The notes beneath the pieces were generated by a model that did not search any database, was not told the DNA's origin, and worked only from the letters and a program-made list of their open reading frames with translations. From positions 124,001 to 188,000 of the IMG/VR virus record IMGVR_UViG_3300042010_000106: a stretch of DNA of 64,000 nucleotides. One strand, written 5' to 3'. Positions 2,762-60,269 of this stretch are shown piece after piece. The translations under genes and the position numbers were made by a program. Position 1 is the first letter of the stretch. Every line of letters starts with the position of its first letter.

Positions 2762-2763
2762 AA

Positions 2764-10735: not shown

Positions 10736-10747
10736 CAGGCAATCAAA

Positions 10748-11017: not shown

Positions 11018-11018
11018 A

Positions 11019-12509: not shown

Positions 12510-12736
12510 AAGGGTTTAAATTCGAAGAATGTCCGATGGGTTTTTACTGGTGTTTCAATATCCAACGCCCGGAAGACAGACCCAATCTGGTCGAGCTGTA
12601 TCAGGCCGTGAATGATGGCGCTGTTTACTTCGCTGCGATGGGCCGCGCATGGCGTGAACCAGCTAAAGCACTGAAGCTGGAAATTCTGCGTTTCGTTCCG
12701 GTGGTCGAGCCGATGTTTGGAGAACTGGATTTATGA
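12506..12736 (+). CDS. Small protein, paralogue array B
   Basis: PMGFYW...RFVPVVEP. Confidence 0.7.
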   Translation: MKGFKFEECPMGFYWCFNIQRPEDRPNLVELYQAVNDGAVYFAAMGRAWREPAKALKLEILRFVPVVEPMFGELDL

Positions 12737-13008
12737 GCGGCGCATTAACGTTCGAAGAAATCGAACACGGCCTTTACTGGATGACGCAAACGAATTTACC
12801 GGATGCACAAGCTTTGCGCGTTCGATACTTCGGTAATTATTTGCATTTCATAGACAACCGTAACACCGTGGCTGTTAGCGATGTGGAATTGCACCTGCTG
12901 CGTTTCGTGCCAATCACAGAACACAACGTCGGTCGGCCCGGTACAGGTTCTGGCCCCGGTGGTGCTGTGACCATCTGTGATGAACATTACGAATTGGGCG
13001 AGCAATGA
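12733..13008 (+). CDS. Small protein, paralogue array B
   Basis: EHGLYW...RFVPITE. Confidence 0.7.
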   Translation: MSGALTFEEIEHGLYWMTQTNLPDAQALRVRYFGNYLHFIDNRNTVAVSDVELHLLRFVPITEHNVGRPGTGSGPGGAVTICDEHYELGEQ

Positions 13009-13250
13009 ACGTTCTGAATTGGGATGAACTGGAAGACGGCAAAGCCTACCTGAAGCACGATATTGACGAAGGGTATACTTCAATGTGTCGCGCTCGGCAT
13101 ACGTGCGGTGGTCGCTATCAATACATTCTGGTCGAAGGCGATGTCGTTCCTAAATTCGCGATCAAATACAAAGACTGTGTTTTTGTCGAAGTTGAAATGC
13201 CTTCACGATCCGATTGGGCCTTGGCAATCCTGCAAAAAGATTCACAGTAA
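13005..13250 (+). CDS. Small protein, paralogue array B
   Basis: EDGKAYL...FVEVEMP. Confidence 0.7.
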   Translation: MNVLNWDELEDGKAYLKHDIDEGYTSMCRARHTCGGRYQYILVEGDVVPKFAIKYKDCVFVEVEMPSRSDWALAILQKDSQ

Positions 13251-13299
13251 TTTCTAGGTATCATCCACTACACAGGCCGGTCGTAAGATCGAGAAATGA

Positions 13300-13545
13300 A
13301 TGCTCTCACTAAATAAAAAACAAGCGCTTAAAATGCGCGGCGAACTGCTCTCACTTAGCGTTGTTGCACTTGATGGGAAAACGTACGGTTACGAATTGCT
13401 TCACCAGTCTGGAAAGATATTCACGCTGTGGCGGATTGATTCACCGAACCGCCTGACGTGTTCTCAATTGGATACTGCGAAAGCGCTCGCCGACTATTTG
13501 AAGTTTGACAGGTTCGCGATTCGCCTACAGGAAATCACTGCATGA
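13300..13545 (+). CDS. Hypothetical protein
   Basis: ORF downstream of GTAATTT at 13247. Confidence 0.6.
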   Translation: MLSLNKKQALKMRGELLSLSVVALDGKTYGYELLHQSGKIFTLWRIDSPNRLTCSQLDTAKALADYLKFDRFAIRLQEITA

Positions 13546-14135
13546 GATTGTTTTTATCCTTGTCGCAACTTGATCGCTTGTTGACTACCGGGCGAATTGA
13601 TTTGCTGCCTGCGTACATCGACAAAGGCGTTACGTATTACTCGCACAATTGCATGCTTCCTGTGGCGATTGCGGAATTGAATTGTCCTGAGCCTTTCATT
13701 GTGCACAATCAGCCATTTGTTGAAGCCGGTGCGTGGTTGACTGCTGTGCACACGTGCGTAATGCCGGAGACAACGAATTTTCACCCTATGTTCGTGTACC
13801 CGGATTTCGACACGATGGTGGCTCACGACATGCGTACGGTGGTCAACGCCTTACATCGTGCCATGAGTCGCCCTGTGGCGCGTTCTAACGACCTTCAGGC
13901 GCTCTCTGTGGCCTTCCTACAGGGTTGCACTGACGAAGAGGTGGCGACGTACCACGCGGTGTTCACTTCGTTCATTGAACTGAATCCGAAATTCGTACGC
14001 ATGGCGTGGAACGCAAACGATATTCCCAACGCCGACAAATTCAAAACGCTTTGCTTGCAGTTACCATCGTCCGGCATGGGCATTTGGGAATCCGCAGCAC
14101 AACACATTTTCAAGAAGTGGACGCTGTACACGTAG
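13542..14135 (+). CDS. Hypothetical protein
   Basis: ATGA overlap; followed by a terminator. Confidence 0.7.
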   Translation: MRLFLSLSQLDRLLTTGRIDLLPAYIDKGVTYYSHNCMLPVAIAELNCPEPFIVHNQPFVEAGAWLTAVHTCVMPETTNFHPMFVYPDFDTMVAHDMRTVVNALHRAMSRPVARSNDLQALSVAFLQGCTDEEVATYHAVFTSFIELNPKFVRMAWNANDIPNADKFKTLCLQLPSSGMGIWESAAQHIFKKWTLYT

Positions 14136-22029: not shown

Positions 22030-23406
22030 TCATGCTTTTACGGTGATAACACCGAGTTTGTCTGCGCCCGCCGCGCCCTCTCTGAAACAGCCAATGACCC
22101 AAAAGGCTGTGTCATTAATCCTGTGAATCATTGCACCACGATTGTAGAAATCTTTTGTGAAATATGGTGTGGAAACAGGATCGAATGGGCCTACGTACAA
22201 ACCGCCGCCGACAATCTTTTTGAAAGCGATACTTAAACGCCGCACACTGCTGCCCGTGTTGTATGGCGTAGCGTGATACAGAGGATTCAAACTCAGTGCC
22301 GCGTCATGGTCGTAAACCGGCGTTGGAAATGTCGCAGGGTTTTCACCAGCACTTATTTCACCCGCCATACCAATAACAGCAGCGACATCGTTTGTAACCC
22401 ACGCTGAATCTAATGGGTTGACAATTTGTGCACCAGCGTTCAGCAGGTTGTTATTTAGATAGCAGTTACCACCCAAATTCAATTGACGCCCGCCTGTGTA
22501 CAGAAACGTTTTCGCCACAATATCAATTGGTAAATACGCATTCAAATTCAGGAAGTTTCCGGTGGCGTTTGCCCCGGCAGCGGGCCACGAATCCAATGCA
22601 GCAGGGTTGAAATATTCACGCGCAAGGATAGCCGTTGCTGCGTTGTAAACTGCAACCCACGGCTGTGCAAAGTTCGGTGCTACCGAATATATTTTGAGTG
22701 GCACAAGTTGGGGAGTTAAAACCTCACGCACGGCAGTTGCTAATGTTGCTTGTGGTTGCGTTGAAAACGCTTGTTCTACCACGACAGCCTGTGCTGTGAG
22801 TTTGCCCGCTGCAAGTGTCAGTGTATTTTTCATCACCAAACGTTGTGCAACGTTGTTCGCACCTACAGGTTGACGCAGAAGAATTTGCAAACCGTTTGGA
22901 TTCACGTCGATATCAATTGGTGCACCATACGTTGGGTACGAGTTACCCTCGGCAATGTTTTGTGTGCGTGTGTCAATTTGTGAATCGACTGTATACGTAC
23001 CGTCCGCATTACGCACAGCAACAATGCACGTATGCGTAAGCGGAATATCCAGTGTTGCATTCAATGCTGTGTAATCTGCTGTCCCTACGTTGCGTATGGT
23101 GCCAGCGGCTGTTGGAGTCTGAGCAAACGACGCAGGAACCATTATGAAAAGTCTGTCATTCCCCAAACTTTTAATTCGTGGTTTAAAATACGTGTAGTTG
23201 GTCTGACTACGCAATGTCACTTGTTTCAGAAACGATGCAGGGCCTAATTCCGTGGCGCCTGCGTTGTAGTTTACTTCCTGCACCAACGCTTTGTTATCAG
23301 CCGTGAAAGTCACGATTGCTACGCGTGTAGGAGAAATGCGGCACCAATCCATTTGGCCGCCGTGGTGCTGAATGCCAGCCGGGTTATCTATGGATACGAA
23401 GGCCAT
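22030..23406 (-). CDS. Virion structural protein
   Basis: Late operon; beta-rich composition. Confidence 0.7.
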   Translation of the reverse strand: MAFVSIDNPAGIQHHGGQMDWCRISPTRVAIVTFTADNKALVQEVNYNAGATELGPASFLKQVTLRSQTNYTYFKPRIKSLGNDRLFIMVPASFAQTPTAAGTIRNVGTADYTALNATLDIPLTHTCIVAVRNADGTYTVDSQIDTRTQNIAEGNSYPTYGAPIDIDVNPNGLQILLRQPVGANNVAQRLVMKNTLTLAAGKLTAQAVVVEQAFSTQPQATLATAVREVLTPQLVPLKIYSVAPNFAQPWVAVYNAATAILAREYFNPAALDSWPAAGANATGNFLNLNAYLPIDIVAKTFLYTGGRQLNLGGNCYLNNNLLNAGAQIVNPLDSAWVTNDVAAVIGMAGEISAGENPATFPTPVYDHDAALSLNPLYHATPYNTGSSVRRLSIAFKKIVGGGLYVGPFDPVSTPYFTKDFYNRGAMIHRINDTAFWVIGCFREGAAGADKLGVITVKA

Positions 23407-28626: not shown

Positions 28627-31600
28627 TTAACCACCTTGCAGCAACCATTTGACCGGGCCATTGTTGAATATTTCACAAATAAACGATTTGTCTACATCCA
28701 ATGTGTAAACGTAACCGTTGTATTTCATGCCAATGTGAACACCAGCAAAATTCTCTGTGAAAGCTTCAATGTCTGACAACGAATCAAACCCTTTGTACAA
28801 CGAAGCAGGGCCGATTTGGTTAACCGATTGCATATCAAGGAATGGTTTCAGATTATAGACACCGTTTTTCGCAGTGGTTTTAATCGGCGTTACGTCAAAC
28901 AGTGCGGTTTTTTCCGAACGTTTAATGGTTGGGCTTCGTTCAGCATATGCGGAATAGTTTTGCATCCACAAAGAAGTCGTGCCGAAATAACCCTGTTGCG
29001 GGCCGTTGATTGCCAGCGTTTCCCGTTCTGTATATTCGCTATGGCCGGAATTTGCATCCACGCCGTCAGCACCAAACATTCCGTAATACGTTTGAGTGTG
29101 CAAAGCAACATCCGTTGGAATTACCCAATGGCCGGTGCCCTGTGCCACGCTACGTTCCCACAACATTCCCGAAAGAACGCTATAGGCTTTGGTACTCATT
29201 GGTTCCATATCAAACAGAATGGTTGTGCTGCTACTTGGAACAGCGACATAAACCACTGTGTAATGGACTGAATGATCGACAGCGTAATACACATATTCAG
29301 TATCAACGTTTCCGTAACCCGCCTTTTGATCGACGAATTCAGCAGCGTTGTAATCCCCGTAATAAGCTTGGGTGAATGTGGTATCCAATTCGAAATGTGC
29401 GTAATTCGTTGACAGCAATGTAACGCCGCTGCTTGCAAAGTACGACAGACCCGAACCACTGCGAACATCGTAGGAAGTTTCAACATTTCCATACAAAGCT
29501 TTTGTGTCAATGAAATCAGCTTGTTTGAAATCGCTGGTTTGTGCTTTCAGTGTGCCCCAAGTCACAACGTTTTTCACGTCGGTACTCAATGCCTGCACGT
29601 AATCCCAAACGACAGTATCGGAAACTTTCGACAACGCTTTCGACATGTCCCAACCAATTGTTACTTCTGCAATCCGTGTGTTAACACTCGTTTTTTCCTG
29701 AATCAAATCAACGAGACTACCGAACAGGTTATGCACCGCCTCTGTAGTGAGTTGCACAAGTGACATCAAAGCTTTCGTCACAAAGGATTGCAATGCAGCC
29801 GCGCTAAACCCTGTGCGCGATTGCAGCCACGACGGTGTGATTTTCGAACCGTAGTAAGCTTGTGTATGTTTCGGCACCAATACAGGCTGGTTGATATTCC
29901 AGCTACCAACCAACAAACGCGCTGTCTCGCCGTTCTCTTCGTAGTAGGCATAAACCGGCATTGTTTTCTGCCAGTAGTTTGTCACGCCGCCATGAATGTA
30001 AACGCGATCATTGTTTTGCACGTTTGCAACAATGCCACTTGGAACACCGTTGATTACCAGATGCGTCCCTTCTGCGAAATAACCCTCAATTTGAATCTTG
30101 CAATTCGGCGGAACCGAAGATGCACGACCAATTGCAGAATCATACAGTTGGAAACGAATCGGATTATCCAGTGTACCGAAATTCAACCAGAAAATGGTCG
30201 GTGTTTCTGCGACCAAAAACAGTTCCGAAACCTGCGTCAAACGATACGGGCTACGTGCTGTTTTCTGGAGAACCAATTGTGCAGTTTGTGTGGTTGCCGT
30301 TCCGCCAATCTTTTCCTTCTGCAAAACCAATTCAGAAGTTTGTGTGATGTTCATGCCTGTAGGCGGCGCATCATAGACCAGCGTTGCGTAAACGTTCGCT
30401 ACCTGCATATCAGGAACGGACGTATCTTTCACCAGAACCAATTCAGCAACTTGTGAGGTGCGAATAGGGCCGAGTGCACTTTTCTGCAAAACAAGTTCAG
30501 CAGTTTGTGTAACGGTTGTTGCAGCAATAGCCGATTTGGTCAGAAGTAATTCAGACAATTGCGTTGTGGCAAATCCGAAACCAGATTCAGTTTCGAAAAT
30601 AAACACGGCGCCGGGATTACCTACGTCGTATTGTCCAGTTGCAGGCGCGCGACCACCACCGGGAACCTGAATATCAATTGTGCCGCTCGCAATATCGTCA
30701 CCAGAAAGGATGAACATTGCAGTAGAACCTGCACCACCCGGCCACGCAGAGTTGTTAATGCCGTCACCAGCACCTTGAACACCACCACCAGACCAACCGT
30801 AATTGCCCACAACACCAGAACTATTTGGACTGGCAAAGTTTGAACCACCGGGGCCGTTTGTTTGGTAAATCGTTTCGGCATTACTTGTGAAAATACCACC
30901 ATCACCAGCATTACACGGATACTGACCAGACGTACCAGACATAATCCGATAACTAGAAGAACCAGAACCAGCAGTGAACGTTTTCGCGCCTATGCTGACA
31001 ATTGCAGGATCGTTCGGAACCGATGCTGAAGGGCCTGTGTACGTGTTTACCGTACCACCGCCTGCACCAGTCATAATCACGTAAACGTATTTGGTACGCG
31101 GACGCAATTTGTGCACATAGTTTTGCTTTGTTCCCAACCCTTGACCGATAAAATTTGTGCGGTAAATACCGACAAGTTCAGCCGTCAAATTGTTGTAGTT
31201 TGGAAACAGTGGAACGATGGGCCTTTCAAAAACTACAGAGCCTTTGAATTCGTAAATGACGACAACGCCGTCACCACCTTTACCGCCCGGTGCACCACCA
31301 GAACCACGCAAACCATTTTGTGCAGCCGCTACAGTTTGGCCACCGGCTTGACCAATACCACCAGCACCAACGTGAACGTTTAAAACTTTTGGAATTATGT
31401 AGGCTTGTGCAAGGCGACCAGAACCACCAGAAATAGAACCTGCTTGGCCGAAGTTGCCGAACGTAATCGACGCGATACCCAACGTTCCGACAGAGCTATC
31501 AACTTTAGTTAAAACGAGAGTTTGATCACCTGTAGTTGCGAGGGTGTATGTGCGCGAAAAACCACCTGAAGAAGCGGTAGCACCGTCAATGGCATTACCA

Positions 31601-33285
31601 TTGAGTGTAACTGTGAATTGCGTTGTGCCTGTGCTGTTATACGGAACCGTTAATTGCTGTCCTGCAAAACCTTTGAAGTTGAGCGTTACGGAATCATTTG
31701 CAGCAGAAACAGACAAACCATAAGTCGCGTTTCGTGCCGCATTACCCGTATAAATCGGCGTCAGTTGTAACGCGCCTGCGCCAGTAAATGTATTGAGTGC
31801 TGCTGTAGCTGGCAGGTTTGTTTGTTGCGCAACCATTGTGAAAGCCGCACCAACCGTTCCCGTAAGGAAAGATTGCGCACCAGCCACGGTATTTGCACTC
31901 GCGCTTGTACCGCCTGCGCGTGAGCCTGTATCAACTTCACGTAGCCAATCAATACCTTTATTGAAAGTTGCAACACCGCCGCCTGATACGCCTGTACCAC
32001 CGGGAGCAGTTAAAAACAAACCTTCTGTTGTAGCAATTGTGGAAGCGCCGCCATTCAACGTGGAATCGTTCTGTGTAACGGTTCCGTTTACGTTCATGTT
32101 GGTGCGGCCACCAGAACCAGCCGCTTGAACGATTGCTAAAACTAACGTTGTGTCAGCAGCCGGGGTGAAAACAAAATCACCGGGCGTATTGTATTCAGTA
32201 CGTACCCAACTTGCGGGCGTTGCACTGAATGGCAAAACAGGAACGATTGCAGGAGGTTTAGGGTTCAAACCGTCTGCACTTGTTTGCACTGGCCCGTAAA
32301 CACTTAATTCCATCAAACGTGTACGATCAAGCCCGCCATTGTTGTAACCCATGATGCTGGCGCCGAAATCGTTTGTCCACGTACCCCAAACAGAACCAGA
32401 AGGCCCATCGGCTGGAATCAAAAGTGTGTTTACTTTGCCGCGACCCCACGGAACGCCGAGGTCATCGGTTGGTGTAACCGTAACGTCAATCAAACGGTGA
32501 ACAGTGAAATCGCCTTTTACCGTTGGCGTACCGTTTGAATAACCGAGTGCAATTGTTTTACCCCACGAATAAAAATAGAACTCAACTTTTCGTGGTTTTA
32601 TTGGGCTTGGAAATTGAAGCGCAACCCAATCAATAATAGCGTTTGCACCAACGTTACCACCAGACCAGCCGCTTGCAGTGTTGCCATCGTTTACCGCTGC
32701 AACTGTACCGAAATCGTTGTATTGCGAAGAGCAAATAGCTGTGCCAATTTGCTTAGCCCATTCAGGTTCTAATGCGTTGACGCCTCTGACAACTACTTCG
32801 TTGATACTGAGGTTTGTGTTAGCACTGCCCGGTGTATTCGTAAGCGCACTGAAACTGTTGCTGTCACTGTACAGAACTATGCCGGGAATTTGTGAAGCGT
32901 TAACAAGAAAACGTAAATTCGTGCTGACGTTGATTACGCTGCCATCTGCATCAGTCTGTCCGTTTACGGTGTAGCTTTGCAGCGGAATAATATCTGCCTT
33001 TGTAAAACTTGCAGACGCAGGATCGGCACCTTGTGCCCACGTACCAATGCGAATGCTGTTACCCCAAGACGCGAAGTTGATTACGATGTCTTCTACGTTT
33101 TTCGGGCCTACAAATTTGATACCAACAAAGTTTAAAAGCGATGTTGTTGCGTCTACGTTCGAACCAATCCAGCGCCGACCATCCGCCAAACCATCATTGA
33201 TTGACGATGGCGCATAGTTCACGTTGTTACTGGAGTACCATACGTTTTTATCGCAAAACGCTGTCCCAATTATTTCTGTTGCCAT
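28627..33285 (-). CDS. Large fibre protein: two discoidin/F5-8C-like domains, Gly-rich domains, TQxxELxL repeats
   Basis: CSSQY..VNDGN..W..DWVALQF; GAGG/GGKGGDGVVVIYE; six ~17-aa repeats. Confidence 0.75.
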   Translation of the reverse strand: MATEIIGTAFCDKNVWYSSNNVNYAPSSINDGLADGRRWIGSNVDATTSLLNFVGIKFVGPKNVEDIVINFASWGNSIRIGTWAQGADPASASFTKADIIPLQSYTVNGQTDADGSVINVSTNLRFLVNASQIPGIVLYSDSNSFSALTNTPGSANTNLSINEVVVRGVNALEPEWAKQIGTAICSSQYNDFGTVAAVNDGNTASGWSGGNVGANAIIDWVALQFPSPIKPRKVEFYFYSWGKTIALGYSNGTPTVKGDFTVHRLIDVTVTPTDDLGVPWGRGKVNTLLIPADGPSGSVWGTWTNDFGASIMGYNNGGLDRTRLMELSVYGPVQTSADGLNPKPPAIVPVLPFSATPASWVRTEYNTPGDFVFTPAADTTLVLAIVQAAGSGGRTNMNVNGTVTQNDSTLNGGASTIATTEGLFLTAPGGTGVSGGGVATFNKGIDWLREVDTGSRAGGTSASANTVAGAQSFLTGTVGAAFTMVAQQTNLPATAALNTFTGAGALQLTPIYTGNAARNATYGLSVSAANDSVTLNFKGFAGQQLTVPYNSTGTTQFTVTLNGNAIDGATASSGGFSRTYTLATTGDQTLVLTKVDSSVGTLGIASITFGNFGQAGSISGGSGRLAQAYIIPKVLNVHVGAGGIGQAGGQTVAAAQNGLRGSGGAPGGKGGDGVVVIYEFKGSVVFERPIVPLFPNYNNLTAELVGIYRTNFIGQGLGTKQNYVHKLRPRTKYVYVIMTGAGGGTVNTYTGPSASVPNDPAIVSIGAKTFTAGSGSSSYRIMSGTSGQYPCNAGDGGIFTSNAETIYQTNGPGGSNFASPNSSGVVGNYGWSGGGVQGAGDGINNSAWPGGAGSTAMFILSGDDIASGTIDIQVPGGGRAPATGQYDVGNPGAVFIFETESGFGFATTQLSELLLTKSAIAATTVTQTAELVLQKSALGPIRTSQVAELVLVKDTSVPDMQVANVYATLVYDAPPTGMNITQTSELVLQKEKIGGTATTQTAQLVLQKTARSPYRLTQVSELFLVAETPTIFWLNFGTLDNPIRFQLYDSAIGRASSVPPNCKIQIEGYFAEGTHLVINGVPSGIVANVQNNDRVYIHGGVTNYWQKTMPVYAYYEENGETARLLVGSWNINQPVLVPKHTQAYYGSKITPSWLQSRTGFSAAALQSFVTKALMSLVQLTTEAVHNLFGSLVDLIQEKTSVNTRIAEVTIGWDMSKALSKVSDTVVWDYVQALSTDVKNVVTWGTLKAQTSDFKQADFIDTKALYGNVETSYDVRSGSGLSYFASSGVTLLSTNYAHFELDTTFTQAYYGDYNAAEFVDQKAGYGNVDTEYVYYAVDHSVHYTVVYVAVPSSSTTILFDMEPMSTKAYSVLSGMLWERSVAQGTGHWVIPTDVALHTQTYYGMFGADGVDANSGHSEYTERETLAINGPQQGYFGTTSLWMQNYSAYAERSPTIKRSEKTALFDVTPIKTTAKNGVYNLKPFLDMQSVNQIGPASLYKGFDSLSDIEAFTENFAGVHIGMKYNGYVYTLDVDKSFICEIFNNGPVKWLLQGG

Positions 33286-53371: not shown

Positions 53372-55159
53372 ATGACTGATTCAAAAGTAAACATTCCAGC
53401 CGACTATTTCCGTACTGAAGGCGAAGTACCAAATGCGGAAAGCAAACAAAGTTTTGCATCGTTGTTCGAACAGGTTGTGGGCGAAGGTGCTATTCCGCCT
53501 AGTCTCGAAATGCCTGATCACGTTGTCGTTGGTACTGAATACGCTATCGACTTGGGCGACCAAACGTTGGCAGACGGCACACCTTTGAAGGTGGTGCGTA
53601 CAACGGTTGATACGATGCTGGCGAAAAGCAGTTTGAGTCCGGGCATTTCGATTGCGGAAAACCACGACAATGTTCAAGGTATGCGCCGTCTTTCACATAG
53701 TGCGCGTATCAACATGCTGAATGAAAAGGATCGCGAAAACTTCGACGAAGTTATGACGTATATGCGCGAAGACAATCGCACACAAAGCCACATTCAACGT
53801 GTGCAAGAATCGTTGCTGGATAAAGCAGGCATTCCAACTTTCTATTCCGTCGAAGAACGTCCGCAACCGATGGAAATGTGGGGCCATTGGTTCAATCCAG
53901 TTACAGGCGAACGTGTTGATAATCCGAACGTTACCTATCGTCGGCATGAATTGGTGAACAATCAGTTTGATCGTCAATACAATGCGAACCTGCTCGACAT
54001 TTTGCAGACAGGTGAACCACGTTTGGATCGTACCGGCATCGGCACATTGATGAAGTTCGGTACGGTTCAACACCACATTGATTTGCGTGAAGGTTTCCCG
54101 GCAACTACCGGCAAGAAATTCGCGTTTGAAACAATGAAAAAAGAAACGATCAAATGGATGCTTGAAGGCAAGTTTGATTTGAAGTCCCTGAAGGATATGG
54201 GCGTCCGCATTTGGGATCAAAACGTAAAGGCTGGCACCGAAGTTTACGGTGAAATGCTCACGTGGGCGGATCGCATTCGCATGCTGACGCCGGGTCAATT
54301 GAAATCGTTCACCGATTACAAAGAAACATACTTTGAACGCGACGATGCAACCGAAAGCGGCTGGCTCGATTACGCAGAAATGAAACTGAACAATTGGGGC
54401 GTTCCTGACCGCGCTTTGATTGACGGTGATTTGGGGCCAATCTACGGTAAGCAATGGCGCGCATGGGAAGACATTCGCATTGTTGATATTGAGGATTGGG
54501 CAGAGAATTGGAAATCGTACCGCGACCGTGGCTTCGATGCGTTTCCAGAAGGCTATTTCGAATACGATGATCGACAGCATGATCGTCCTGTTCGTACACA
54601 CGCAATCATCAAACGTGAAATTGATCAGATTGCAAACATCGAAATCGCCATTCAAAACGAACTGAAATTTCACAATGGCGAAATCTACAAGCACAGCGAA
54701 GGCCGTCGAATTATTCTGACCGGGTGGAACGTTGCGCAGCTCGACGAAATGTCTTTGCCTCCTTGCCACACACTGGCGCAATGGTCGGTATCGCAAACCA
54801 AAGACGAAAACGGTCGCAATTATCTGGATTGTGAATTGTACCAACGCAGCAACGATATGTTTTTGGGTTGCCCGTTCAACGTTGCACAATACGCATTGAT
54901 TACCGAAATGCTCGCACACGCTCACGGCATGACAGCGCGTTGGTTGCACCACACAATCGGTGATGCGCACATTTACCAGAATCACATTGAAGGCGATGAT
55001 GGCGTGAAAGCTTTGCTGCAACGTCCAATCATTCACAACAGTCCGCGTCTGCATATTGCCGGTGAACACACGTCGATTCTCGATATCAAAATTGAGGATG
55101 TCACCATGTCCGGCTACGAAAGCCATCCGCCGTTTGTAGGCGTCCCAATCGCCAAGTGA
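53372..55159 (+). CDS. thyA: Thymidylate synthase with N-terminal extension and insertions
   Basis: DRTGIGT, DLGPIYGKQWR, LPPCH, YQRSNDMFLGCPFN, GDAHIYQNH. Confidence 0.95.
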   Translation: MTDSKVNIPADYFRTEGEVPNAESKQSFASLFEQVVGEGAIPPSLEMPDHVVVGTEYAIDLGDQTLADGTPLKVVRTTVDTMLAKSSLSPGISIAENHDNVQGMRRLSHSARINMLNEKDRENFDEVMTYMREDNRTQSHIQRVQESLLDKAGIPTFYSVEERPQPMEMWGHWFNPVTGERVDNPNVTYRRHELVNNQFDRQYNANLLDILQTGEPRLDRTGIGTLMKFGTVQHHIDLREGFPATTGKKFAFETMKKETIKWMLEGKFDLKSLKDMGVRIWDQNVKAGTEVYGEMLTWADRIRMLTPGQLKSFTDYKETYFERDDATESGWLDYAEMKLNNWGVPDRALIDGDLGPIYGKQWRAWEDIRIVDIEDWAENWKSYRDRGFDAFPEGYFEYDDRQHDRPVRTHAIIKREIDQIANIEIAIQNELKFHNGEIYKHSEGRRIILTGWNVAQLDEMSLPPCHTLAQWSVSQTKDENGRNYLDCELYQRSNDMFLGCPFNVAQYALITEMLAHAHGMTARWLHHTIGDAHIYQNHIEGDDGVKALLQRPIIHNSPRLHIAGEHTSILDIKIEDVTMSGYESHPPFVGVPIAK

Positions 55160-55552
55160 GTGCCTATGCAATTCCCAAAAGAAATCGCTTTTGCTGACAT
55201 TGTGACCGCACTATATTCGCATATGATGGCGGAAGCAGACTTTAGCCATCGTGGTAGTCACGGCAGATTCCACAACATGCACGAAGCAATGAAAGCCAGT
55301 AATCACGACGAAGTTTGGGAAATTGCTAAAGCCTTTGCAGACGCCGACCCATTCGCTTTGTGGACTGAACGTAAAACCATTCGTGATCTTTTTGAAATCG
55401 GTGAAAAGTGCTTCGGTTTGTGCGAGCTTGGTTTCGCACAAATCACGCGAAAAGGTTACATATTCAAGTCGTTCGAATATACCGAACACATGGACAAGGA
55501 AATGATCGTTGTTAAAAGTGGGAAGCACGTAAATGAAAAAGCTACTGCTTAG
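55160..55552 (+). CDS. Hypothetical protein
   Basis: Operon packing. Confidence 0.65.
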   Translation: MPMQFPKEIAFADIVTALYSHMMAEADFSHRGSHGRFHNMHEAMKASNHDEVWEIAKAFADADPFALWTERKTIRDLFEIGEKCFGLCELGFAQITRKGYIFKSFEYTEHMDKEMIVVKSGKHVNEKATA

Positions 55553-55946
55553 GTGGTGGCCGTTGTGGGTATGGGTCGCTTCGGTGGCCCTTATCCTTTT
55601 GGCAGCTCCATACGTTCCGTTCAAACTGTTTCAATTTCTGTTCCTGTTTTGGATATGTGTTTCTATCGTCGGTTTCATTCCTGTAGGTGCAAGCCTGCTA
55701 ACTGACATCGAAGACACGCTGCGCAGAAAGCAGGTTGAACCGCCGTTCATAGGCCCGCGTATCCGTCGAGAATTCGATTGGAAACGCATGCGTATGGTCG
55801 AGATAGACACGCAGCCGGAAATCTGTAAAGGACTACAAGACATCCACAAAACATTAGATGATTGCCACGCCAGCCTTGATCGTACGATTGAGTTAGTGCG
55901 TGAAACCAATCGTATTAAAAGGGAATTGTATGACAGCAACCCATGA
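55533..55946 (+). CDS. Membrane protein (2 TM) with coiled-coil tail
   Basis: Two hydrophobic segments. Confidence 0.65.
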   Translation: MKKLLLRWWPLWVWVASVALILLAAPYVPFKLFQFLFLFWICVSIVGFIPVGASLLTDIEDTLRRKQVEPPFIGPRIRREFDWKRMRMVEIDTQPEICKGLQDIHKTLDDCHASLDRTIELVRETNRIKRELYDSNP

Positions 55947-56274
55947 AACGTACATGTTTTCTAGCCTGAAAGGAAAGCGTGAAGAATGGTCGCCACCGCT
56001 CACGCTAACCGTTGCTGAATTTTGGGAACGTGTGCGCGTTTGCCATGCAGTGTTTATTCCAATTGCTTACTGGCGTGTGCTGATTCGACAGGACAATATT
56101 ATTCACATGGTTGCAGGCGGTGTTATGCGTGCGTCTTGCGAATACCCTGTCGGCGTGAAGAATGGCGTTCACATTTATTCCGATGCTTTCACCGGCGTTG
56201 ACGTTAAAGGCTTCGGCAATCCAATTATTTTGGTACATCCATACCAGTCACCAGCTTTCGAGGATATTACATGA
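55930..56274 (+). CDS. Small protein resembling an HK97-fold capsid A-domain
   Basis: AVFIPIAYWRVLI..VGVKNGVHIYSDAF. Confidence 0.5.
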   Translation: MTATHETYMFSSLKGKREEWSPPLTLTVAEFWERVRVCHAVFIPIAYWRVLIRQDNIIHMVAGGVMRASCEYPVGVKNGVHIYSDAFTGVDVKGFGNPIILVHPYQSPAFEDIT

Positions 56275-56987
56275 GCCTCACAACCGATTTAGAAATCTTC
56301 AGCCCCACCGATTTGGTGCGTTTGTCTGAAGGTGCTGAAAAGATTTTCATGCCGCGTGTGCAGTTCGACGTTTACATAAAAGTTGATTCAATTCGCGGTT
56401 TGTTCGAACCGTACCAGCATGAAACCATTCCCGGCCCATCGTGGAAATTCAACGGTGTGCATATCGCAATTGACGACGTATTTCTCGACGAAGGTGAACC
56501 AATCATCACGTCGTTTAAATACCCGAACTTTGTGGAGCCGAAACGCGATTATCCGTACAGCATTCACAAGCAAACGATTCCACACGTGCCGAGCATGGGC
56601 CTGTATGGCGATTGCCACCGCGTTGTAATTGCGTGCATGCTGAATAAGCGTCCTGAAGAGGTTCCGCATTTCCACGAAGGTTTACCGCCTGTGCCTGAAA
56701 GCGGTGAAGAATTCGAACGTCGTGTGGATGAATACCTTGCCACGCAAAACCTTCAGCAATTTCAGGTTCGCTATCAAGACAATTTGCGTGTGCGTGATGT
56801 TCTGCGCGAAAGCCGTGGTGCGCTCTGCATTCTCAGTGGCACCAGCGTTGGCAAAGTTGACCATAGCGTTCTGGTTCACGACAGCAAAATTGTTGTCGAT
56901 CCGAGTCCGAGCAATGTTGGTATTAACGGGCCAATGTCAAACAACTATTACAGCCTCACTTTCCTGATCCCCAAACGGTACAGCTAA
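56271..56987 (+). CDS. Capsid-A-domain-like module fused to a papain/C39-like peptidase domain
   Basis: KIFMP..FNGVHIAIDD, then KQT..GDCHRVVIACML..EVPHF..DHSVL..VDPSP. Confidence 0.55.
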   Translation: MSLTTDLEIFSPTDLVRLSEGAEKIFMPRVQFDVYIKVDSIRGLFEPYQHETIPGPSWKFNGVHIAIDDVFLDEGEPIITSFKYPNFVEPKRDYPYSIHKQTIPHVPSMGLYGDCHRVVIACMLNKRPEEVPHFHEGLPPVPESGEEFERRVDEYLATQNLQQFQVRYQDNLRVRDVLRESRGALCILSGTSVGKVDHSVLVHDSKIVVDPSPSNVGINGPMSNNYYSLTFLIPKRYS

Positions 56988-57371
56988 ATGGAACAATTCG
57001 ATACTGATTCGTTGAACCGTGCGTATATGAGTACGCTGCGTGCGCTGTTTCGAATTGAAGTCCCATCGTTTGTTGCACCGGGTAAAGGTATCGAAACACT
57101 GCGTGAAAATCTCGGCTGTTTTCTTCGTGCCCAAGGTATCGAAGCGCGCCGGGTTGAAATGCCCAACCTGAAGAAAGCTTTGCGTTATACAAAGCATGGT
57201 GCAGGCGTTTTGGAATGCACAATGGTTAACGATTTAACCTATGGCGCTATCAGCTTTGACGGGCAATTCTATGAGCATGGCAGCGCCGCAGGTTTCCACA
57301 AATACGCCGCACGCAAATACACGTGCGTTACCTTCCACAAGCAAGCAACGACAGGCACATACAATGCGTGA
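56988..57371 (+). CDS. Hypothetical protein, possible degenerate C39-like paralogue
   Basis: EVPSF and similar strand order, but no catalytic Cys/His. Confidence 0.55.
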   Translation: MEQFDTDSLNRAYMSTLRALFRIEVPSFVAPGKGIETLRENLGCFLRAQGIEARRVEMPNLKKALRYTKHGAGVLECTMVNDLTYGAISFDGQFYEHGSAAGFHKYAARKYTCVTFHKQATTGTYNA

Positions 57372-57780
57372 ATTTCATCGTGTTATTTCGGCATTCCCCG
57401 GCGTAGGTAAATCCAAAGCTGTAGAGATTGTGCCGAACCTGATCGACCTCGATTTGCCGGGTATTCCAATGGGTGAATACATCGACAAAATCAACGATCA
57501 TTTGAGCAACGATATGCGTGTGCTGGTGCCATCGTGGGAAACTCTGCGCGTGGCTATGCGTGACGCTGGGATTATCTATTCCCTCGTTTATCCGCAGCGT
57601 GATTTAAAAGCCGATTACATGATGCGTTACATTCGTCGCGGTTCGGATGAAAAGTTTCTGAATACTTTGAACAATCGTTGGGATGCGTTCATTGATTCCT
57701 GCATTGCCGATCCAATCGACGACCATTTGGTTCTCAAACAATCGCAAGCCTACCTTTCGGACTTCTTCATCTATGAATGA
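57364..57780 (+). CDS. Small P-loop NTPase/nucleotide-kinase-like protein
   Basis: VISAFPGVGKS, IDLD, LVYP..Y..RY..RG. Confidence 0.75.
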   Translation: MREFHRVISAFPGVGKSKAVEIVPNLIDLDLPGIPMGEYIDKINDHLSNDMRVLVPSWETLRVAMRDAGIIYSLVYPQRDLKADYMMRYIRRGSDEKFLNTLNNRWDAFIDSCIADPIDDHLVLKQSQAYLSDFFIYE

Positions 57781-58279
57781 CATTAGCGCAATTGCTTTTC
57801 CAACCGCAGAAGAACGGGCGCAGCGCGTGCGCGACGAATTCAACGCTGATTTCAAAAAGCGTTGGAAAGCCAAAGGCGATTGCGGCGAATTCACCAGCGA
57901 TATTTGGGCATGGCAGGAAATGCTTGAACAATCGGGTTGGGAAATCCAACTGTACGCACGGCACATTGCAGTGTTCACAACGTTCGTGGATTTCGATGCA
58001 AAGTTGATCGTCAATAACAATCCGAAAGCGTTCCATGCGCAGGGTGCGTTGCGCGAAATCGTTGATTGTATCTTTGCCGATGCAAAAGGCCGGTGGCTGT
58101 TCTATTGGGAAGAGGTTCACGACGATGCACACCGCCACGTGCGTGATGGCGACGAATACAAAGACTCCCCGTATTACATGACTGTTTGGTACAGCATGGA
58201 ATTGCGCGTGCGTGAAATGGCTGAAGGCGAAGACCTTCCGTTACCGTCCGCTGAAGAAATTGCGCCGGTGATGCTATGA
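57773..58279 (+). CDS. Hypothetical protein
   Basis: Operon packing. Confidence 0.65.
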   Translation: MNDISAIAFPTAEERAQRVRDEFNADFKKRWKAKGDCGEFTSDIWAWQEMLEQSGWEIQLYARHIAVFTTFVDFDAKLIVNNNPKAFHAQGALREIVDCIFADAKGRWLFYWEEVHDDAHRHVRDGDEYKDSPYYMTVWYSMELRVREMAEGEDLPLPSAEEIAPVML

Positions 58280-58560
58280 GTAGCCGCGACCGCAGGTCAG
58301 TGTTCCTTCTGCACTTCATTTTCAACCCGGCTGAAGTTGATTTGCCGGACGGTTTCGACGACGTGTTGATTAGCCTGAACATCTGGCCCAAACACATTGG
58401 CGGAATTGAACAGAAAAAGGCGATTCTGAATCAACAGGAATTCAACATTCGCGGCACCACGTTCTATCGGAACCCACCGAACCGGAAAGAAAGTGGCACC
58501 ATCACATTTCGTTATGCACAGGGCAACAAAACCCGTGTGACAAGGGAAGAATATGATTGA
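58276..58560 (+). CDS. Hypothetical protein
   Basis: ATGA overlap. Confidence 0.6.
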   Translation: MSSRDRRSVFLLHFIFNPAEVDLPDGFDDVLISLNIWPKHIGGIEQKKAILNQQEFNIRGTTFYRNPPNRKESGTITFRYAQGNKTRVTREEYD

Positions 58561-58909
58561 TCCTCTGATCAAAGCAGCGTTGAAAGAAATGGATCGCCAA
58601 GAAATGGATTTGTTTTCGCGCCTGCATAACACCATTACCGATAACAGCTTCGCGTACAACACAATTGAGTACGTGATTCACCGCATGGAAAATGCAAAGG
58701 TAATGTTGGTGCCACATAACCATCCGCTGCGCAGGCTGATTGAAAAGCACGTGTATTTCATGCCGCTGATTCAGCCAGAAGATCCCGGCCACATTGGTAA
58801 TTGGGATGGTGTGCCTGTCGTTGTGAATGTTCACCCTACAAAACAAACCCGGTTGGCAACTGTCTACGGTTTGAATCCTGTCGGCCACCACATTTTGGGC
58901 ACGCTATGA
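58553..58909 (+). CDS. Small protein resembling a capsid spine-helix end plus A-domain
   Basis: EMDRQEMDLF..KVMLVP..GHIGNWDGVPVVV. Confidence 0.5.
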   Translation: MIDPLIKAALKEMDRQEMDLFSRLHNTITDNSFAYNTIEYVIHRMENAKVMLVPHNHPLRRLIEKHVYFMPLIQPEDPGHIGNWDGVPVVVNVHPTKQTRLATVYGLNPVGHHILGTL

Positions 58910-59229
58910 ATATCTATATCGTTAACAGTAGGGTAAACAAAGCCATTCTGTGTGGATATCTTTATGCAATTACAGACTCTACGCAATTCTCTGAATACAT
59001 AGGGCAAGAACTGCGTGGGCATCTGACCAATATCGGCGATTTTGAAACGATGGCATTTAACGGTGCTGTAGCTGCTATCGGTTGCACCAATCCGAAACGC
59101 ATTTTTAACGACCGTGATTACTACATAGATCGCGGTGATGAATACGGCGATACATCTGGCGATTTCCGTTTCTACTGTGAAGACGATTTGCCAAGCGCCT
59201 ACGATATCATTAAACCGGAGCCTATGTGA
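58906..59229 (+). CDS. Hypothetical protein (paralogue of the next gene)
   Basis: IYIVNSRVNKAILCG; TNPK. Confidence 0.6.
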   Translation: MNIYIVNSRVNKAILCGYLYAITDSTQFSEYIGQELRGHLTNIGDFETMAFNGAVAAIGCTNPKRIFNDRDYYIDRGDEYGDTSGDFRFYCEDDLPSAYDIIKPEPM

Positions 59230-59486
59230 TGCTCGTTTATGCACTCAATAAATCGGCAAACAAAGCGCTGACCATTGGCTGTCTGTTCTGGTTCGGCGCA
59301 CGTGAAATCAAAGACATGACCAATGAAGAAATTCTTCAGGTCTGCCGTCCAACTAATCCGAAATGCCGTGAAGCTTTCGACATGATGTACACCAATTTCA
59401 AATCGGATGAAATCGTGTTGAAAAACTGGTTGCCTGAGAATTGCAAAGTGATCAAAGGTTATTGGGAGACTGAACATGCTCGATAA
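59226..59486 (+). CDS. Hypothetical protein
   Basis: VYALNKSANKALTIG; TNPK. Confidence 0.6.
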   Translation: MMLVYALNKSANKALTIGCLFWFGAREIKDMTNEEILQVCRPTNPKCREAFDMMYTNFKSDEIVLKNWLPENCKVIKGYWETEHAR

Positions 59487-59763
59487 GAATTTGACGATTT
59501 ACGAAATGCACGACAAGAAACGCCCGAAAGCTCCAATGGCAGAAATGCTTATGGGGTTTATGAAAAACCCGGCGTACAAAGTCAGCTTCTACGCGACTCC
59601 GCAAATGCTGCAAAAGATCATTGATGTCTACGGCCCGGTTGAGGATTTGACGCACATTCCTAAACACTATGTGCCGTCGATGATCTTCGTTCAGATTGAA
59701 CAAACGCGCTTTGTTAAAAAGCTCATGTTCGGCAACTTCTCAAAGGAAATGATTCTGCCATGA
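59476..59763 (+). CDS. Hypothetical protein
   Basis: GGAG RBS. Confidence 0.65.
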   Translation: MLDKNLTIYEMHDKKRPKAPMAEMLMGFMKNPAYKVSFYATPQMLQKIIDVYGPVEDLTHIPKHYVPSMIFVQIEQTRFVKKLMFGNFSKEMILP

Positions 59764-60269
59764 CATTTAAAGTCGGCGTTATCTTTGCGTGTGACAAAAA
59801 CGGCGGTATTGGTTTCGAAGGCCATATGCCTTGGCACGCGCCCGAGGATTTGAAGCAATTCAAAATCCGCACAATGGGCAAACCAATTATCATGGGGCGT
59901 AAGACGTGGGAAAGTTTCGAAGGCCGCATGCTTCCCGGTCGTCCGCACATTGTAATCACGTCGCAGAACATTTCGATTCCGTTGACGGGTTTGCAACAAA
60001 TGCACATTGCACGTGATTATGCCGAAGCGCTTTATCAGGCTATGCAGTACGGTGACGAAGCGTGGGTAATTGGCGGCGCGTCATTGATTGAACAGGCAAT
60101 GCGTAGTGCTTCAATGATTCGTATCACGCATATGAAACATGAATACAAAACCGATGTCCGTGTGAATAAGAAAGCGTTGGAACGCGTTTATGCAAACCGT
60201 GTTTCTGCGCATGAAATCTGGTCGTTGGAAACTGAACAGTTCACAGTCACTGAATACCAGATGAACTAA
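59760..60269 (+). CDS. folA: Dihydrofolate reductase
   Basis: GIGFEGHMPWHAPEDLKQFK..T..IIMGRKTWES..LPGR..WVIGG. Confidence 0.95.
   Translation: MTFKVGVIFACDKNGGIGFEGHMPWHAPEDLKQFKIRTMGKPIIMGRKTWESFEGRMLPGRPHIVITSQNISIPLTGLQQMHIARDYAEALYQAMQYGDEAWVIGGASLIEQAMRSASMIRITHMKHEYKTDVRVNKKALERVYANRVSAHEIWSLETEQFTVTEYQMN

What the first reader, a model, noticed from the sequence alone, without database searches (positions are those of the whole stretch)
56271..57371. Capsid-like module fused to a papain-like protease, followed by an apparent dead paralogue
Seen: the C-half of 56271 has Q..GDC(HR), H(SVL) and D(PSP), a Cys-His-Asp order typical of C39-like peptidases. The next gene keeps EVPxF, a xLxxQ helix and a similar strand order, but has no Cys or His at those positions (NRAY, TYGAI). 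Inference: this could be a 'bait-plus-protease' fusion that cleaves whatever binds the capsid-like domain, with a pseudo-enzyme acting as regulator or partner.
Basis: partly seen in the sequence, partly recalled or inferred. Interest (0 to 1): 0.7.

Follow-up and report, generated by a model that had tools for sequence, protein, structure and literature searches.

The report
Capsid-fold adaptor fused to phage protease
A 312-kb Lu11-like jumbo phage encodes a cysteine protease of an unstudied, phage-wide family fused to a small domain shaped like part of a capsid protein, followed by an inactive but conserved copy of the protease; this looks like a targeted protease whose target is still unknown.

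Summary
Gene 56271-56987 (238 aa) folds with high confidence (pLDDT 93) into two domains. Residues 94-238 are a papain-like fold closest to C39 peptidase domains. They belong to an uncharacterised phage family (phrog_5845, 764 clusters) in which Cys115 and His198 are invariant and Asp210 is nearly so. Residues 1-90 match only HK97-fold shells (encapsulins, phage capsids; Z 4.6-6.7), not a whole capsid protein.

Gene 56988-57371 (127 aa) shows no BLAST similarity to it. Profile-profile comparison (E 5e-6, about twice the best shuffled control) and its own model make it a diverged copy with Cys replaced by Ala (NRAY for GDCH) and His by Tyr (TYGAI for DHSVL). It is under purifying selection.

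New evidence: in a related phage the capsid-like domain and the protease are separate genes of the same operon. Other family members carry different N-terminal domains: a neighbouring gene's product, an RNA-polymerase alpha-CTD, or DUF1643. The best reading is an adaptor-directed protease made in the middle/late thymidylate synthase-to-DHFR operon. The target, the "bait" idea and the role of the dead copy remain inferred. The complex prediction gave no verdict.

The parts
56271..56987 (+). g1: two-domain protein, 238 aa (capsid-fold N-domain plus papain-like/C39-like cysteine peptidase domain)
   Evidence: ORF. AF2 model pLDDT 93.4. Close orthologues at 79-96% identity and distant two-domain orthologues at 30-35%. 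dN/dS 0.15-0.18.
56271..56546 (+). N-domain, aa 1-92: small alpha/beta module resembling the C-terminal (A-domain) half of the HK97 capsid fold
   Evidence: PDB VIA-align hits to residues 1-90 are only HK97-fold shells, Z 4.6-6.7. ESM Atlas rows 8-10. A free-standing 82-aa homologue sits at L017:2868-3116 (N-profile 28.8 bits, E 3e-10). No sequence match to any other ORF of the phage genome.
56550..56984 (+). C-domain, aa 94-238: papain-like cysteine peptidase domain of family phrog_5845
   Evidence: phrog_5845 E 4.1e-29. 764 clusters at E<=0.001. PDB Z 8.4-8.8 to PeiR, ComA, LahT and PCAT1 peptidase domains. AFDB 'Peptidase C39-like' E 4.5e-13. BFVD phage proteins E 7.8e-13.
56613..56615 (+). 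Codon of Cys115, the predicted nucleophile (GDC motif)
   Evidence: 134/134 conserved. At the N-terminus of helix 115-123. Codon tgc read.
56862..56864 (+). Codon of His198, the predicted general base
   Evidence: 134/134 conserved. At the start of strand 197-203.
56898..56900 (+). Codon of Asp210, the predicted third triad residue (DP motif)
   Evidence: 131/134 conserved. Follows strand 206-209.
56988..57371 (+). g2: 127-aa catalytically dead paralogue of the protease domain (Ala12 for Cys, Tyr85 for His)
   Evidence: hhalign E 3e-5 to 5e-6 with shuffle controls. The AF2 model (pLDDT 68) has the same secondary-structure order and its best PDB matches (ranks 1-15) are all papain-like proteins. 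The ESM Atlas model's top structural hit is a Peptidase_C39 cluster. dN/dS 0.08-0.36. Homologues occur only in the close clade plus L014:387-761.
57773..58279 (+). Y: conserved 168-aa protein of unknown function, linked to the protease by a fusion in a related phage
   Evidence: 49% identical over 140 aa to the N-terminal half of P0108, a Y plus protease fusion at L014:1595-2536. Present in 9 of 10 related loci.
55160..55552 (+). X: conserved ~130-aa neighbour of unknown function, directly upstream of the protease gene in distant relatives
   Evidence: Present in 8 of 10 related loci. Any relation to the protease fold is not above shuffled controls.
55930..56274 (+). g0: 114-aa upstream gene, translationally coupled to g1; possible but unproven copy of the N-domain
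   Evidence: BLASTP to the g1 N-domain is collinear, 27% identity, E 0.01. The profile-profile score is within shuffles. Present in 4 of 10 loci. dN/dS 0.13-0.25.
53372..60269 (+). Operon frame: thymidylate synthase to dihydrofolate reductase, all on the + strand and tightly packed, divergent from the baseplate genes
   Evidence: Pfam and PHROG hits for ThyA and DHFR, and baseplate wedge on the minus strand. The same synteny is seen in Lu11, where a putative middle/late promoter is annotated upstream of ThyA, and in seven metagenomic relatives whose fetched stretch reaches both genes.

Best explanation
g1 is an active, cytoplasmic, adaptor-directed cysteine peptidase.

Its C-terminal domain is a papain-like (C39-like) catalytic unit with a Cys115-His198-Asp210 triad. 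It belongs to a large uncharacterised phage family that usually occurs as a free-standing protein of about 150 aa. In this Lu11-like jumbo-phage clade the catalytic unit works with small accessory proteins encoded in the same middle/late operon (thymidylate synthase to DHFR). One of these, a 90-aa module with the fold of the HK97 capsid A-domain region, has been fused to its N-terminus.

The module most likely supplies substrate or partner recognition, and the protease then makes a limited, site-specific cut.

g2 arose from a copy of the catalytic domain. It lost the nucleophile and the histidine but is kept by selection. It most likely binds the same ligand, or the enzyme itself, without cleaving, acting as a non-catalytic regulator or competitor in the way the C39-like domains of toxin exporters bind substrate.

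Shown here: the folds, the conserved triad, the dead paralogy, the fusion/fission pattern and the operon context. Inferred: peptidase activity, the recognition role of the N-domain, any g1-g2 contact and the identity of the target.
For: - Fold and triad.
- Family breadth: 764 clusters, mostly proteins of 140-160 aa, in many phage genera.
- N-domain HK97-like fold.
- Fusion and fission. The N-domain is fused to the protease in 7 of 10 related loci and free-standing in L017, three genes from a free-standing protease. Y is fused to the protease in L014. An RNAP alpha-CTD (PF03118, 29.9 bits, above the cut-off) and DUF1643 (E 3.3e-38) are fused to the protease in other members.
- Context. In Sansa, AXL3, Lumi and Lu11 the family sits among replication and nucleotide-metabolism genes, not lysis genes.
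- g2 paralogy and loss of Cys and His. g2 model. Purifying selection.
- Precedent for non-cleaving C39-like domains: the PDB entry 3zua, 'A C39-like domain', is among the hits of both models.
Against: - No biochemical evidence of proteolysis exists for any family member. Papain-fold enzymes also act as transferases, deamidases, lyases and ligases, and such entries are among the structural hits (22oc, 9qvj, 7yn1, 7wuw, 2btw).
- The predicted oxyanion Gln101 lies 14 residues before the Cys. From my own knowledge the usual spacing in papain and C39 is about 6.
- The N-domain matches to capsid folds are of middling strength (Z<=6.7) with no sequence support.
- g2 is absent from 6 of 10 related loci.
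- The complex prediction gave no answer.
- pTM of the g1 model is only 0.67, so the mutual position of the two domains is not defined.
Confidence: 0.5

Rival explanations
1. Anti-defence bait. The N-domain mimics the capsomer-forming surface of a capsid A-domain. It lures host immune sensors that recognise major capsid proteins, and the tethered protease cuts them before the real capsid protein accumulates.
For: - The N-domain has an HK97 A-domain-like fold.
- Avs7, Avs8 and Avs10 are reported to bind the penton/hexon-forming interface of the capsid A-domain, and Dsr1 also senses the capsid protein (PMC13581612).
- A bare decoy would risk triggering such sensors, which would explain coupling it to a destructive activity (inference).
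- Another family member carries a host-protein-like domain, the RNAP alpha-CTD.
Against: - No sensor, host or substrate is identified.
- The N-domain has no detectable sequence similarity to any ORF of its own genome, so mimicry of the phage's own capsid protein is not shown.
- The operon is annotated as middle/late in Lu11, which is rather late for pre-emptive defence.
- Lu11 and L014 lack the N-domain altogether.
Confidence: 0.2
2. Virion-directed role. The capsid-fold module docks on the phage's own capsomers or procapsid. The protease then processes head or internal proteins, or is itself packaged and delivered into the next cell.
For: - The capsid-like fold could pair with A-domains in a capsomer (inference).
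- The operon lies next to the baseplate genes, with a middle/late promoter in Lu11.
- In Xanthomonas phage Mallos the family member lies directly upstream of the portal gene.
- No canonical prohead protease family was detected in this genome, though these were weak tests.
Against: - Most family members lie in replication or nucleotide-metabolism regions.
- The comparative study of jumbo phages assigns a T4 gp21-type prohead serine peptidase to group 2 phages and places Lu11 in subgroup 2.2 (PMC7824862).
- The S77 search here was uninformative because its control did not ring.
Confidence: 0.13
3. The catalytic domain is not an endopeptidase. It is either an isopeptidase/deconjugase (deubiquitinase-like) or another papain-fold enzyme such as a deamidase, acyltransferase or amide ligase, acting on a protein or a small molecule.
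For: - Structural hits include Josephin, UfSP, ZUFSP and bacterial 'clippase' enzymes at Z 5.4-6.3.
- They also include non-protease papain-fold enzymes: 22oc lyase Z 7.6, 2btw Z 7.1, 9qvj Z 6.5.
- One member has a weak match to the Gln_amidase family.
Against: - The best and most numerous matches are C39 peptidase domains and PeiR (Z 8.4-8.8).
- AFDB neighbours are named C39-like.
- No ubiquitin-like gene or conjugation enzyme was seen in the operon.
Confidence: 0.12
4. Cell-wall hydrolase. The domain is a PeiR- or NlpC/P60-type peptidoglycan peptidase used for entry or lysis.
For: The top PDB hit is the pseudomurein endoisopeptidase PeiR (Z 8.8). A phage endolysin and type VI amidase effectors appear low in the g2 hit list.
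Against: - No Pfam match to NlpC/P60, CHAP or any wall-binding domain in g1 or in any of the 134 aligned family members, g1 included.
- No hydrophobic N-terminus in the sequence.
- The location is a nucleotide-metabolism operon, not a lysis cassette or a tail protein.
Confidence: 0.03

Closest known systems
C39 bacteriocin-processing peptidase domains of ABC exporters (ComA, LahT, PCAT1)
   Same: Compact papain-like fold of about 140 aa. The Cys is at a helix N-terminus and His and Asp are on consecutive strands. These are among the closest solved structures, Z 8.4-8.6, just behind PeiR at 8.8, and they head the Foldseek list.
   Different: - No match to the Pfam C39 models.
- Soluble phage protein, not the N-terminus of a transporter.
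- No double-glycine peptide gene nearby.
- The family has its own signature (KQ..HxP..GDCxR...VPHF...NHSV...DP) with the Gln 14 residues before the Cys.
C39-like domains (CLDs) of RTX-toxin exporters such as HlyB (PDB 3zua)
   Same: g2, like a CLD, keeps the fold but lacks the catalytic Cys. 3zua is hit by both models: Z 4.9 for g1 and 4.3 for g2.
   Different: g2 is a free-standing phage protein next to an active paralogue, and it has also lost the His. Substrate binding by g2 is only inferred.
HK97-fold shell proteins (phage major capsid proteins, encapsulins)
   Same: The g1 N-domain superposes on about 85 residues of the C-terminal, A-domain-containing half of encapsulin and phage capsid proteins. 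ESM Atlas neighbours carry the Phage_capsid and Gp13-like families.
   Different: It is only about 90 aa, too short to hold a complete HK97 fold (N-arm, E-loop, P-domain and A-domain). There is no profile match. It cannot form a shell as such.
Pseudomonas phage Lu11 gene Lu11_0220 and its operon
   Same: Orthologous protease domain (36.7% identity) in the same ThyA-to-DHFR operon beside the baseplate genes, with the Y and P-loop neighbours.
   Different: The Lu11 protein is free-standing (151 aa), without the capsid-fold domain. Lu11 has no g2. It is followed instead by an unrelated 239-aa protein.

Membership tests
phrog_5845 (uncharacterised phage Cys-His-Asp family) | Significant match to the family profile over the whole domain | tested here: met
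   E 4.1e-29, residues 94-229 on profile positions 14-145 of 170. 764 representative clusters at E<=0.001.
phrog_5845 (uncharacterised phage Cys-His-Asp family) | Family-invariant Cys, His and Asp are present | tested here: met
   C115 134/134, H198 134/134, D210 131/134.
Peptidase C39 (Pfam PF03412, or C39-like PF13529) | Match to the curated sequence profile | tested here: not met
   No Pfam family at E<=1 for g1. No C39 model among the families hit by any of 134 members at E<=0.05.
Peptidase C39 (Pfam PF03412, or C39-like PF13529) | Papain-like fold closest to C39 peptidase domains, with Cys on a helix N-terminus and His and Asp on adjacent strands | tested here: met
   Z 8.4-8.6 to ComA, LahT and PCAT1. 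AFDB C39-like clusters at E 4.5e-13. Secondary-structure positions of the triad.
Peptidase C39 (Pfam PF03412, or C39-like PF13529) | N-terminal domain of an ABC exporter, with a double-glycine leader-peptide substrate encoded nearby | tested here: not met
   g1 is a 238-aa soluble protein. The operon holds ThyA, DHFR and small unknown genes only.
Peptidase C39 (Pfam PF03412, or C39-like PF13529) | Cleavage after Gly-Gly | not testable with these tools
   Needs an enzyme assay.
HK97-fold major capsid protein (PF05065 and relatives) | Profile match | tested here: not met
   No Pfam hit for g1. PF05065 and PF07068 are not found anywhere in the genome. A profile of the N-domain finds no PDB sequence.
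HK97-fold major capsid protein (PF05065 and relatives) | Complete fold with N-arm, E-loop, P-domain and A-domain | tested here: not met
   The N-domain is 90 aa with two helices and six strands. It aligns to only about 85 residues of the C-terminal half of shell proteins.
HK97-fold major capsid protein (PF05065 and relatives) | Sub-domain superposes on solved HK97-fold shells | tested here: met
   9bhu Z 6.7, 6x8m Z 6.2, 9eg4 Z 5.5, 9m66 Z 4.6. These are the only hits to residues 1-90 among the top 50. ESM Atlas rows 8-10 agree. The strength is moderate.
C39-like pseudo-peptidase domain (CLD), applied to g2 | Papain-like/C39-like fold retained | tested here: met
   hhalign probability 74-86%, E 3e-5 to 5e-6, well above shuffles. 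The AF2 model (pLDDT 68) has its best PDB matches (ranks 1-15) all among papain-like proteins, Z<=5.8. ESM Atlas top structural hit is a Peptidase_C39 cluster, TM 0.48.
C39-like pseudo-peptidase domain (CLD), applied to g2 | Catalytic Cys missing | tested here: met
   Ala12 aligns with Cys115 and Tyr85 (Phe in P0005) with His198. Ala12 is invariant in the g2 family.
C39-like pseudo-peptidase domain (CLD), applied to g2 | Part of a type 1 secretion ABC transporter and binds its substrate | tested here: not met
   g2 is a free-standing 127-aa protein in a phage operon. Binding is not testable here.
NlpC/P60, CHAP or PeiR-type cell-wall peptidase | Profile match, a wall-binding or secretion feature, or a place in a lysis or tail module | tested here: not met
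   No such Pfam hit. Nucleotide-metabolism operon. The PeiR fold match at Z 8.8 does not discriminate within the clan.
Deubiquitinase-like papain-fold enzymes (Josephin, UfSP, ZUFSP) | Closest structural neighbours and a ubiquitin-like partner in context | tested here: inconclusive
   Z 5.4-6.3, lower than for C39 domains. No ubiquitin-like gene was recognised in the operon.

The most novel reading that the evidence does not exclude
g1 is a counter-defence weapon of a new type: a fragment of capsid fold used as bait for host immune receptors that sense the capsid A-domain (Avs7/8/10, Dsr1 or CapRel-like systems), tethered to a protease that destroys the receptor on contact. On this reading the wider family (phrog_5845) is a modular platform in which different mimic domains (capsid A-domain, RNA-polymerase alpha-CTD, DUF1643, Y) aim the same protease at different host proteins. 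The dead paralogue g2 would then act as a decoy or regulator.
Probability: 0.18. Interest if true: 0.85.

Novelty: new variant of a known kind. Interest (0 to 1): 0.6.

Why it matters
Cytoplasmic phage proteases that act on host or phage proteins outside head maturation are little known. This family is very widespread (764 sequence clusters; siphophages, myophages and jumbo phages of many hosts) and has no described function.

The locus gives three handles for study:
- a clear catalytic triad to mutate;
- natural fusion and fission that names the likely partners (capsid-fold module, Y, alpha-CTD, DUF1643);
- a natural inactive paralogue.

Several bacterial immune sensors are now reported to recognise the capsid A-domain. 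A capsid-fold module tethered to a protease therefore turns the question of whether phages proteolytically disarm capsid sensors into a simple co-expression experiment.

If the target proves to be a phage protein instead, the locus would define a new accessory step in jumbo-phage morphogenesis.

Tried and rejected
- **Searches that found nothing.**
  - Megablast of the locus against GenBank phages: no match.
  - tblastn of g2 against phages: none.
  - BLASTP of g1 against g2: none.
  - Pfam, NCBIfam and PDB sequence searches gave nothing useful for g1, g2, X, g0 or Y; the PHROG search gave nothing for g2, X, g0 or Y.
  - The word-based homology search found only 5 g2 relatives, even with a profile.
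- **Complex prediction.** g1+g2 scored 0.00, with no verdict either way. It is not used as evidence.
- **X as a second dead protease copy.** The first profile score was 25.6 against shuffles up to 19.2 and 20.8 reversed. With more sequences it was 21.7 against shuffles up to 22.9. Not supported.
- **Other possible copies of the capsid-fold module.** I suspected g0 (55930-56274), the 58553-58909 family, L002:5810-6622 and Lu11_0219 from shared-looking motifs. The pairwise E 0.01 for g0 was not confirmed, and profile scores lie within or barely above shuffles. Left open.
- **N-domain against the phage's own proteins.** The N-domain profile finds nothing significant among all ORFs of the phage genome, so similarity to the phage's own capsid protein is not shown.
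- **Capsid and prohead-protease families in the genome.** PF05065, PF07068, PF03420 and PF04586 give no hits. Two of these controls did not ring, so the result is uninformative.
- **ESM Atlas look-ups.** Nothing usable for the N-domain or for X.
- **Promoter and terminator scan of the operon.** Fewer sites than in shuffles.
- **Paralogy among the ORFs at 191-14135.** None.
- **Literature.** No paper describing this family was found.
Full report
**Setting.** The window is bases 124001-188000 of a 312,325-bp virus record with direct terminal repeats. A 766-aa tail-region protein is 66% identical to proteins of Pseudomonas phages HRDY3 and Lu11 and 43% to PaBG, so this is a Lu11-like jumbo phage. 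The finding lies in a tightly packed plus-strand operon running from a thymidylate synthase (53372-55159) to a dihydrofolate reductase (59760-60269). The operon is divergent from baseplate genes on the minus strand. The same layout is found in Lu11, where the depositors annotated a putative middle/late promoter upstream of the thymidylate synthase gene. It is also found in seven metagenomic relatives whose fetched stretch reaches both genes.

**Gene 1, catalytic half.** The 238-aa product has no Pfam or NCBIfam match. Residues 94-229 match phrog_5845, a family of unknown function, at E 4.1e-29. An exhaustive HMMER search of 1.84 billion representatives found 764 clusters at E<=0.001. Nearly all are free-standing proteins of 140-160 aa that align to residues ~98-235. 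tblastn finds members in phages of Pseudomonas, Xanthomonas, Caulobacter, Stenotrophomonas, Acinetobacter, Variovorax, Xylophilus and Microcystis.

In an alignment of 134 members, Cys115 and His198 are invariant. Asp210 is 131/134, Gly113 133, Asp114 129, Arg117 128, His105 129 and Gln101 120. AlphaFold2 on this alignment gave mean pLDDT 93.4. Cys115 is at the N-terminus of helix 115-123, His198 opens strand 197-203, and Asp210 follows the next strand. This is the papain-like arrangement.

The best solved-structure matches for residues 94-238 are PeiR (Z 8.8) and the C39 peptidase domains of ComA, LahT and PCAT1 (Z 8.4-8.6). A long tail of clan-CA enzymes follows. Foldseek ranks the C39 domains first. 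AlphaFold DB neighbours are named 'Peptidase C39-like' (E 4.5e-13), and BFVD returns uncharacterised proteins of phages Sansa, CcrColossus, Lemuria and phiRSL1. 'C39-like' is right at the level of fold. By sequence, the family lies outside the curated C39 models.

**Gene 1, N-terminal half.** Residues 1-90 form a separate alpha/beta module (strand-helix-strand-helix, then four strands) with pLDDT 88-96. Among the top 50 solved chains, every match confined to residues 1-90 is an HK97-fold shell protein:
- a family 2B encapsulin (Z 6.7, 85 residues);
- the SrpI encapsulin (Z 6.2);
- the capsid of phage LME-1 (Z 5.5);
- the capsid of phage NF5 (Z 4.6).

In each case the match is to the C-terminal half of the shell protein, the half that holds the A-domain. 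An independent shape search of the ESM Atlas returns clusters carrying Gp13-like and Phage_capsid families for residues 2-87.

No sequence method sees this. There is no Pfam hit and no PDB sequence hit with an N-domain profile. No ORF of the phage's own genome resembles it. 'Capsid-like module' is therefore supported as a partial fold resemblance of moderate strength, not as membership of a capsid family.

**Gene 2.** The 127-aa product has only five homologues among 5.8 billion clusters, all from close relatives. It has no BLASTP similarity to gene 1. The evidence that it is a diverged copy of the catalytic domain is as follows.
- Profile-profile comparison with the protease family gives 94 collinear columns, score 36.4, E 3e-5.
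- Sixty block-shuffled versions reach at most 19.7, and the reversed alignment 12.3. A second control gives 34.2 against 17.7.
- A distant homologue, L014:387-761, turned up in another relative (g2 profile E 9.6e-9). Adding it raised the match to probability 86%, E 5e-6, and extended it to the N-terminus.
- In that alignment NRAY pairs with GDCH (Ala12 for Cys115), EVPSF with EVPHF, and TYGAI with DHSVL (Tyr85 for His198).
- The AF2 model (pLDDT 68) has the same order of secondary-structure elements as g1 residues 115-234.
- Its best solved-structure matches (ranks 1-15, and nearly all of the top 50) are papain-like proteins, including the non-catalytic C39-like domain 3zua. Z is only 4-6.
- The ESM Atlas model's best structural neighbour is a Peptidase_C39 cluster.
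- Ala12 is invariant in the g2 family, and position 85 is Tyr or Phe.
- dN/dS is 0.08-0.36.

So this is a working gene for an inactive protein, not a decaying pseudogene.

**Evidence from relatives.** I compared ten Lu11-like loci with profiles of each neighbour.

| Component | Distribution across the 10 loci |
|---|---|
| Capsid-fold domain | Fused to the protease in seven; absent in two (Lu11, L014); a separate 82-aa gene in L017 |
| Y (window 57773-58279) | Present in nine; in L014 it replaces the capsid-fold domain as the N-terminus of the protease |
| X (55160-55552) | Present in eight, often directly upstream of the protease |
| g2 | Present in only four |

In L017 the free-standing N-domain gene follows the thymidylate synthase gene, three genes upstream of a free-standing protease. 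It matches the N-domain profile at 28.8 bits, E 3e-10, over positions 6-85 of 91. The Y fusion protein in L014, P0108, is 49% identical to window Y over 140 aa, E 3e-45.

Outside this clade, the same catalytic domain carries an RNA-polymerase alpha C-terminal domain (PF03118, 29.9 bits, above the cut-off) or DUF1643 (E 3.3e-38), plus several unassigned extensions.

Fusion in one lineage and separate genes in another is the classic sign of proteins that work together. The variety of N-terminal domains on one catalytic unit argues that these domains direct the enzyme.

In smaller phages the family sits among helicase/primase, DNA ligase, ThyX or dNMP-kinase genes. In Mallos it is the last gene before the portal.

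**Interpretation.** The best-supported reading is an adaptor-directed cytoplasmic cysteine peptidase made with the middle/late nucleotide-metabolism genes.
- Shown: the folds, the triad, the dead paralogue, the linkage by fusion and fission, and the context.
- Inferred: that it cleaves peptide bonds, that the capsid-fold domain recruits the substrate or partner, and that g2 binds something without cutting it.

What the enzyme is aimed at is open. [quoted passage not shown] An A-domain-like lure tethered to a protease would be a logical countermeasure. Nothing here shows it, and I rate it at about one in five.

The rivals are:
- docking on the phage's own capsid, for processing or packaging;
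- a deconjugase or other papain-fold chemistry;
- least likely, a wall hydrolase.

The comparative survey of jumbo phages assigns a T4 gp21-type prohead protease to group 2 phages and places Lu11 in subgroup 2.2 (PMC7824862). This argues against g1 being the head-maturation protease.

**Limits.**
- The g1+g2 complex job gave no verdict.
- The host is unknown.
- Suspected further copies of the capsid-fold module, and a suspected third protease-fold copy (X), did not survive shuffle controls.

**Verdict.** The locus is a new architectural variant of a known kind of enzyme (a clan-CA cysteine peptidase), in an unstudied and very widespread phage family, with an unusual capsid-fold adaptor and a conserved pseudo-enzyme. 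It yields a sharply testable hypothesis.

Noticed in passing
L017:2868-3116 (ena:ERZ2270907 NODE_201): A free-standing 82-aa homologue of the g1 N-domain, placed right after the thymidylate synthase gene. It lies three genes upstream of a free-standing protease (P0015) in a related jumbo phage.
   Followed up: yes
L014:1595-2536 (P0108), L019:4001-4678 (P0073), P0111: The same protease domain is fused to other N-terminal domains. These are the Y protein that is a separate gene in the window (57773-58279), an RNA-polymerase alpha C-terminal domain, and DUF1643. A DUF1643 protein is also encoded near the family member in Stenotrophomonas phage AXL3.
   Followed up: partly
L014:387-761: A distant g2 homologue (124 aa) placed right after the thymidylate synthase gene. 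It has KDAYY where the family has GDCxR, so the Cys is already Ala. It keeps a His one position away from the catalytic His column (NGVHFAVI). It may be an intermediate stage of decay.
   Followed up: partly
window 53372-55159: The thymidylate synthase is 595 aa. The Pfam domain covers residues 202-588 with large insertions (387 residues on a 266-position profile), and there is an N-terminal extension of about 190 aa of unknown function. Relatives range from 340 to 594 aa.
   Followed up: no
window 58553-58909 and orthologues (L005:6293, L006:5179, L002:6866, L014:2770, Lu11_0218): A conserved ~110-120-aa family carries the motif 'a.vMLVPhnH ... PGhIG.fdGvPVvVN'. From memory this recalls the C-terminal motif of HK97-type capsid proteins and the g1 N-domain (FMPRVQ ... 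WKFNGVHIAI). Profile comparison with the N-domain was marginal (21.1 against shuffles of 17.6) and fell to 16.5 with more sequences.
   Followed up: partly
L015:5447-6166 (Lu11_0219), L017:4473-5189, L002:5810-6622: In relatives, proteins of 238-270 aa directly follow the protease gene. They appear to hold two repeats of a similar 'vlvP ... G..G..vysD' pattern. No significant similarity to the N-domain could be shown.
   Followed up: partly
window 55533-55946: A 137-aa protein with a strongly hydrophobic N-terminal half (predicted membrane protein) sits between X and g0. A 93-aa counterpart lies directly upstream of the protease gene in L006.
   Followed up: no
window 57364-57780: A small P-loop protein (138 aa, GVGKS motif, phrog_4182, function unknown) overlaps the g2 stop codon. 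It is present in 5 of 10 related loci.
   Followed up: no
window 28627-33285 and 22030-23406 (minus strand): The 1,551-aa ORF product and the 457-aa ORF product in the structural region have no PHROG match at E<=0.001.
   Followed up: no
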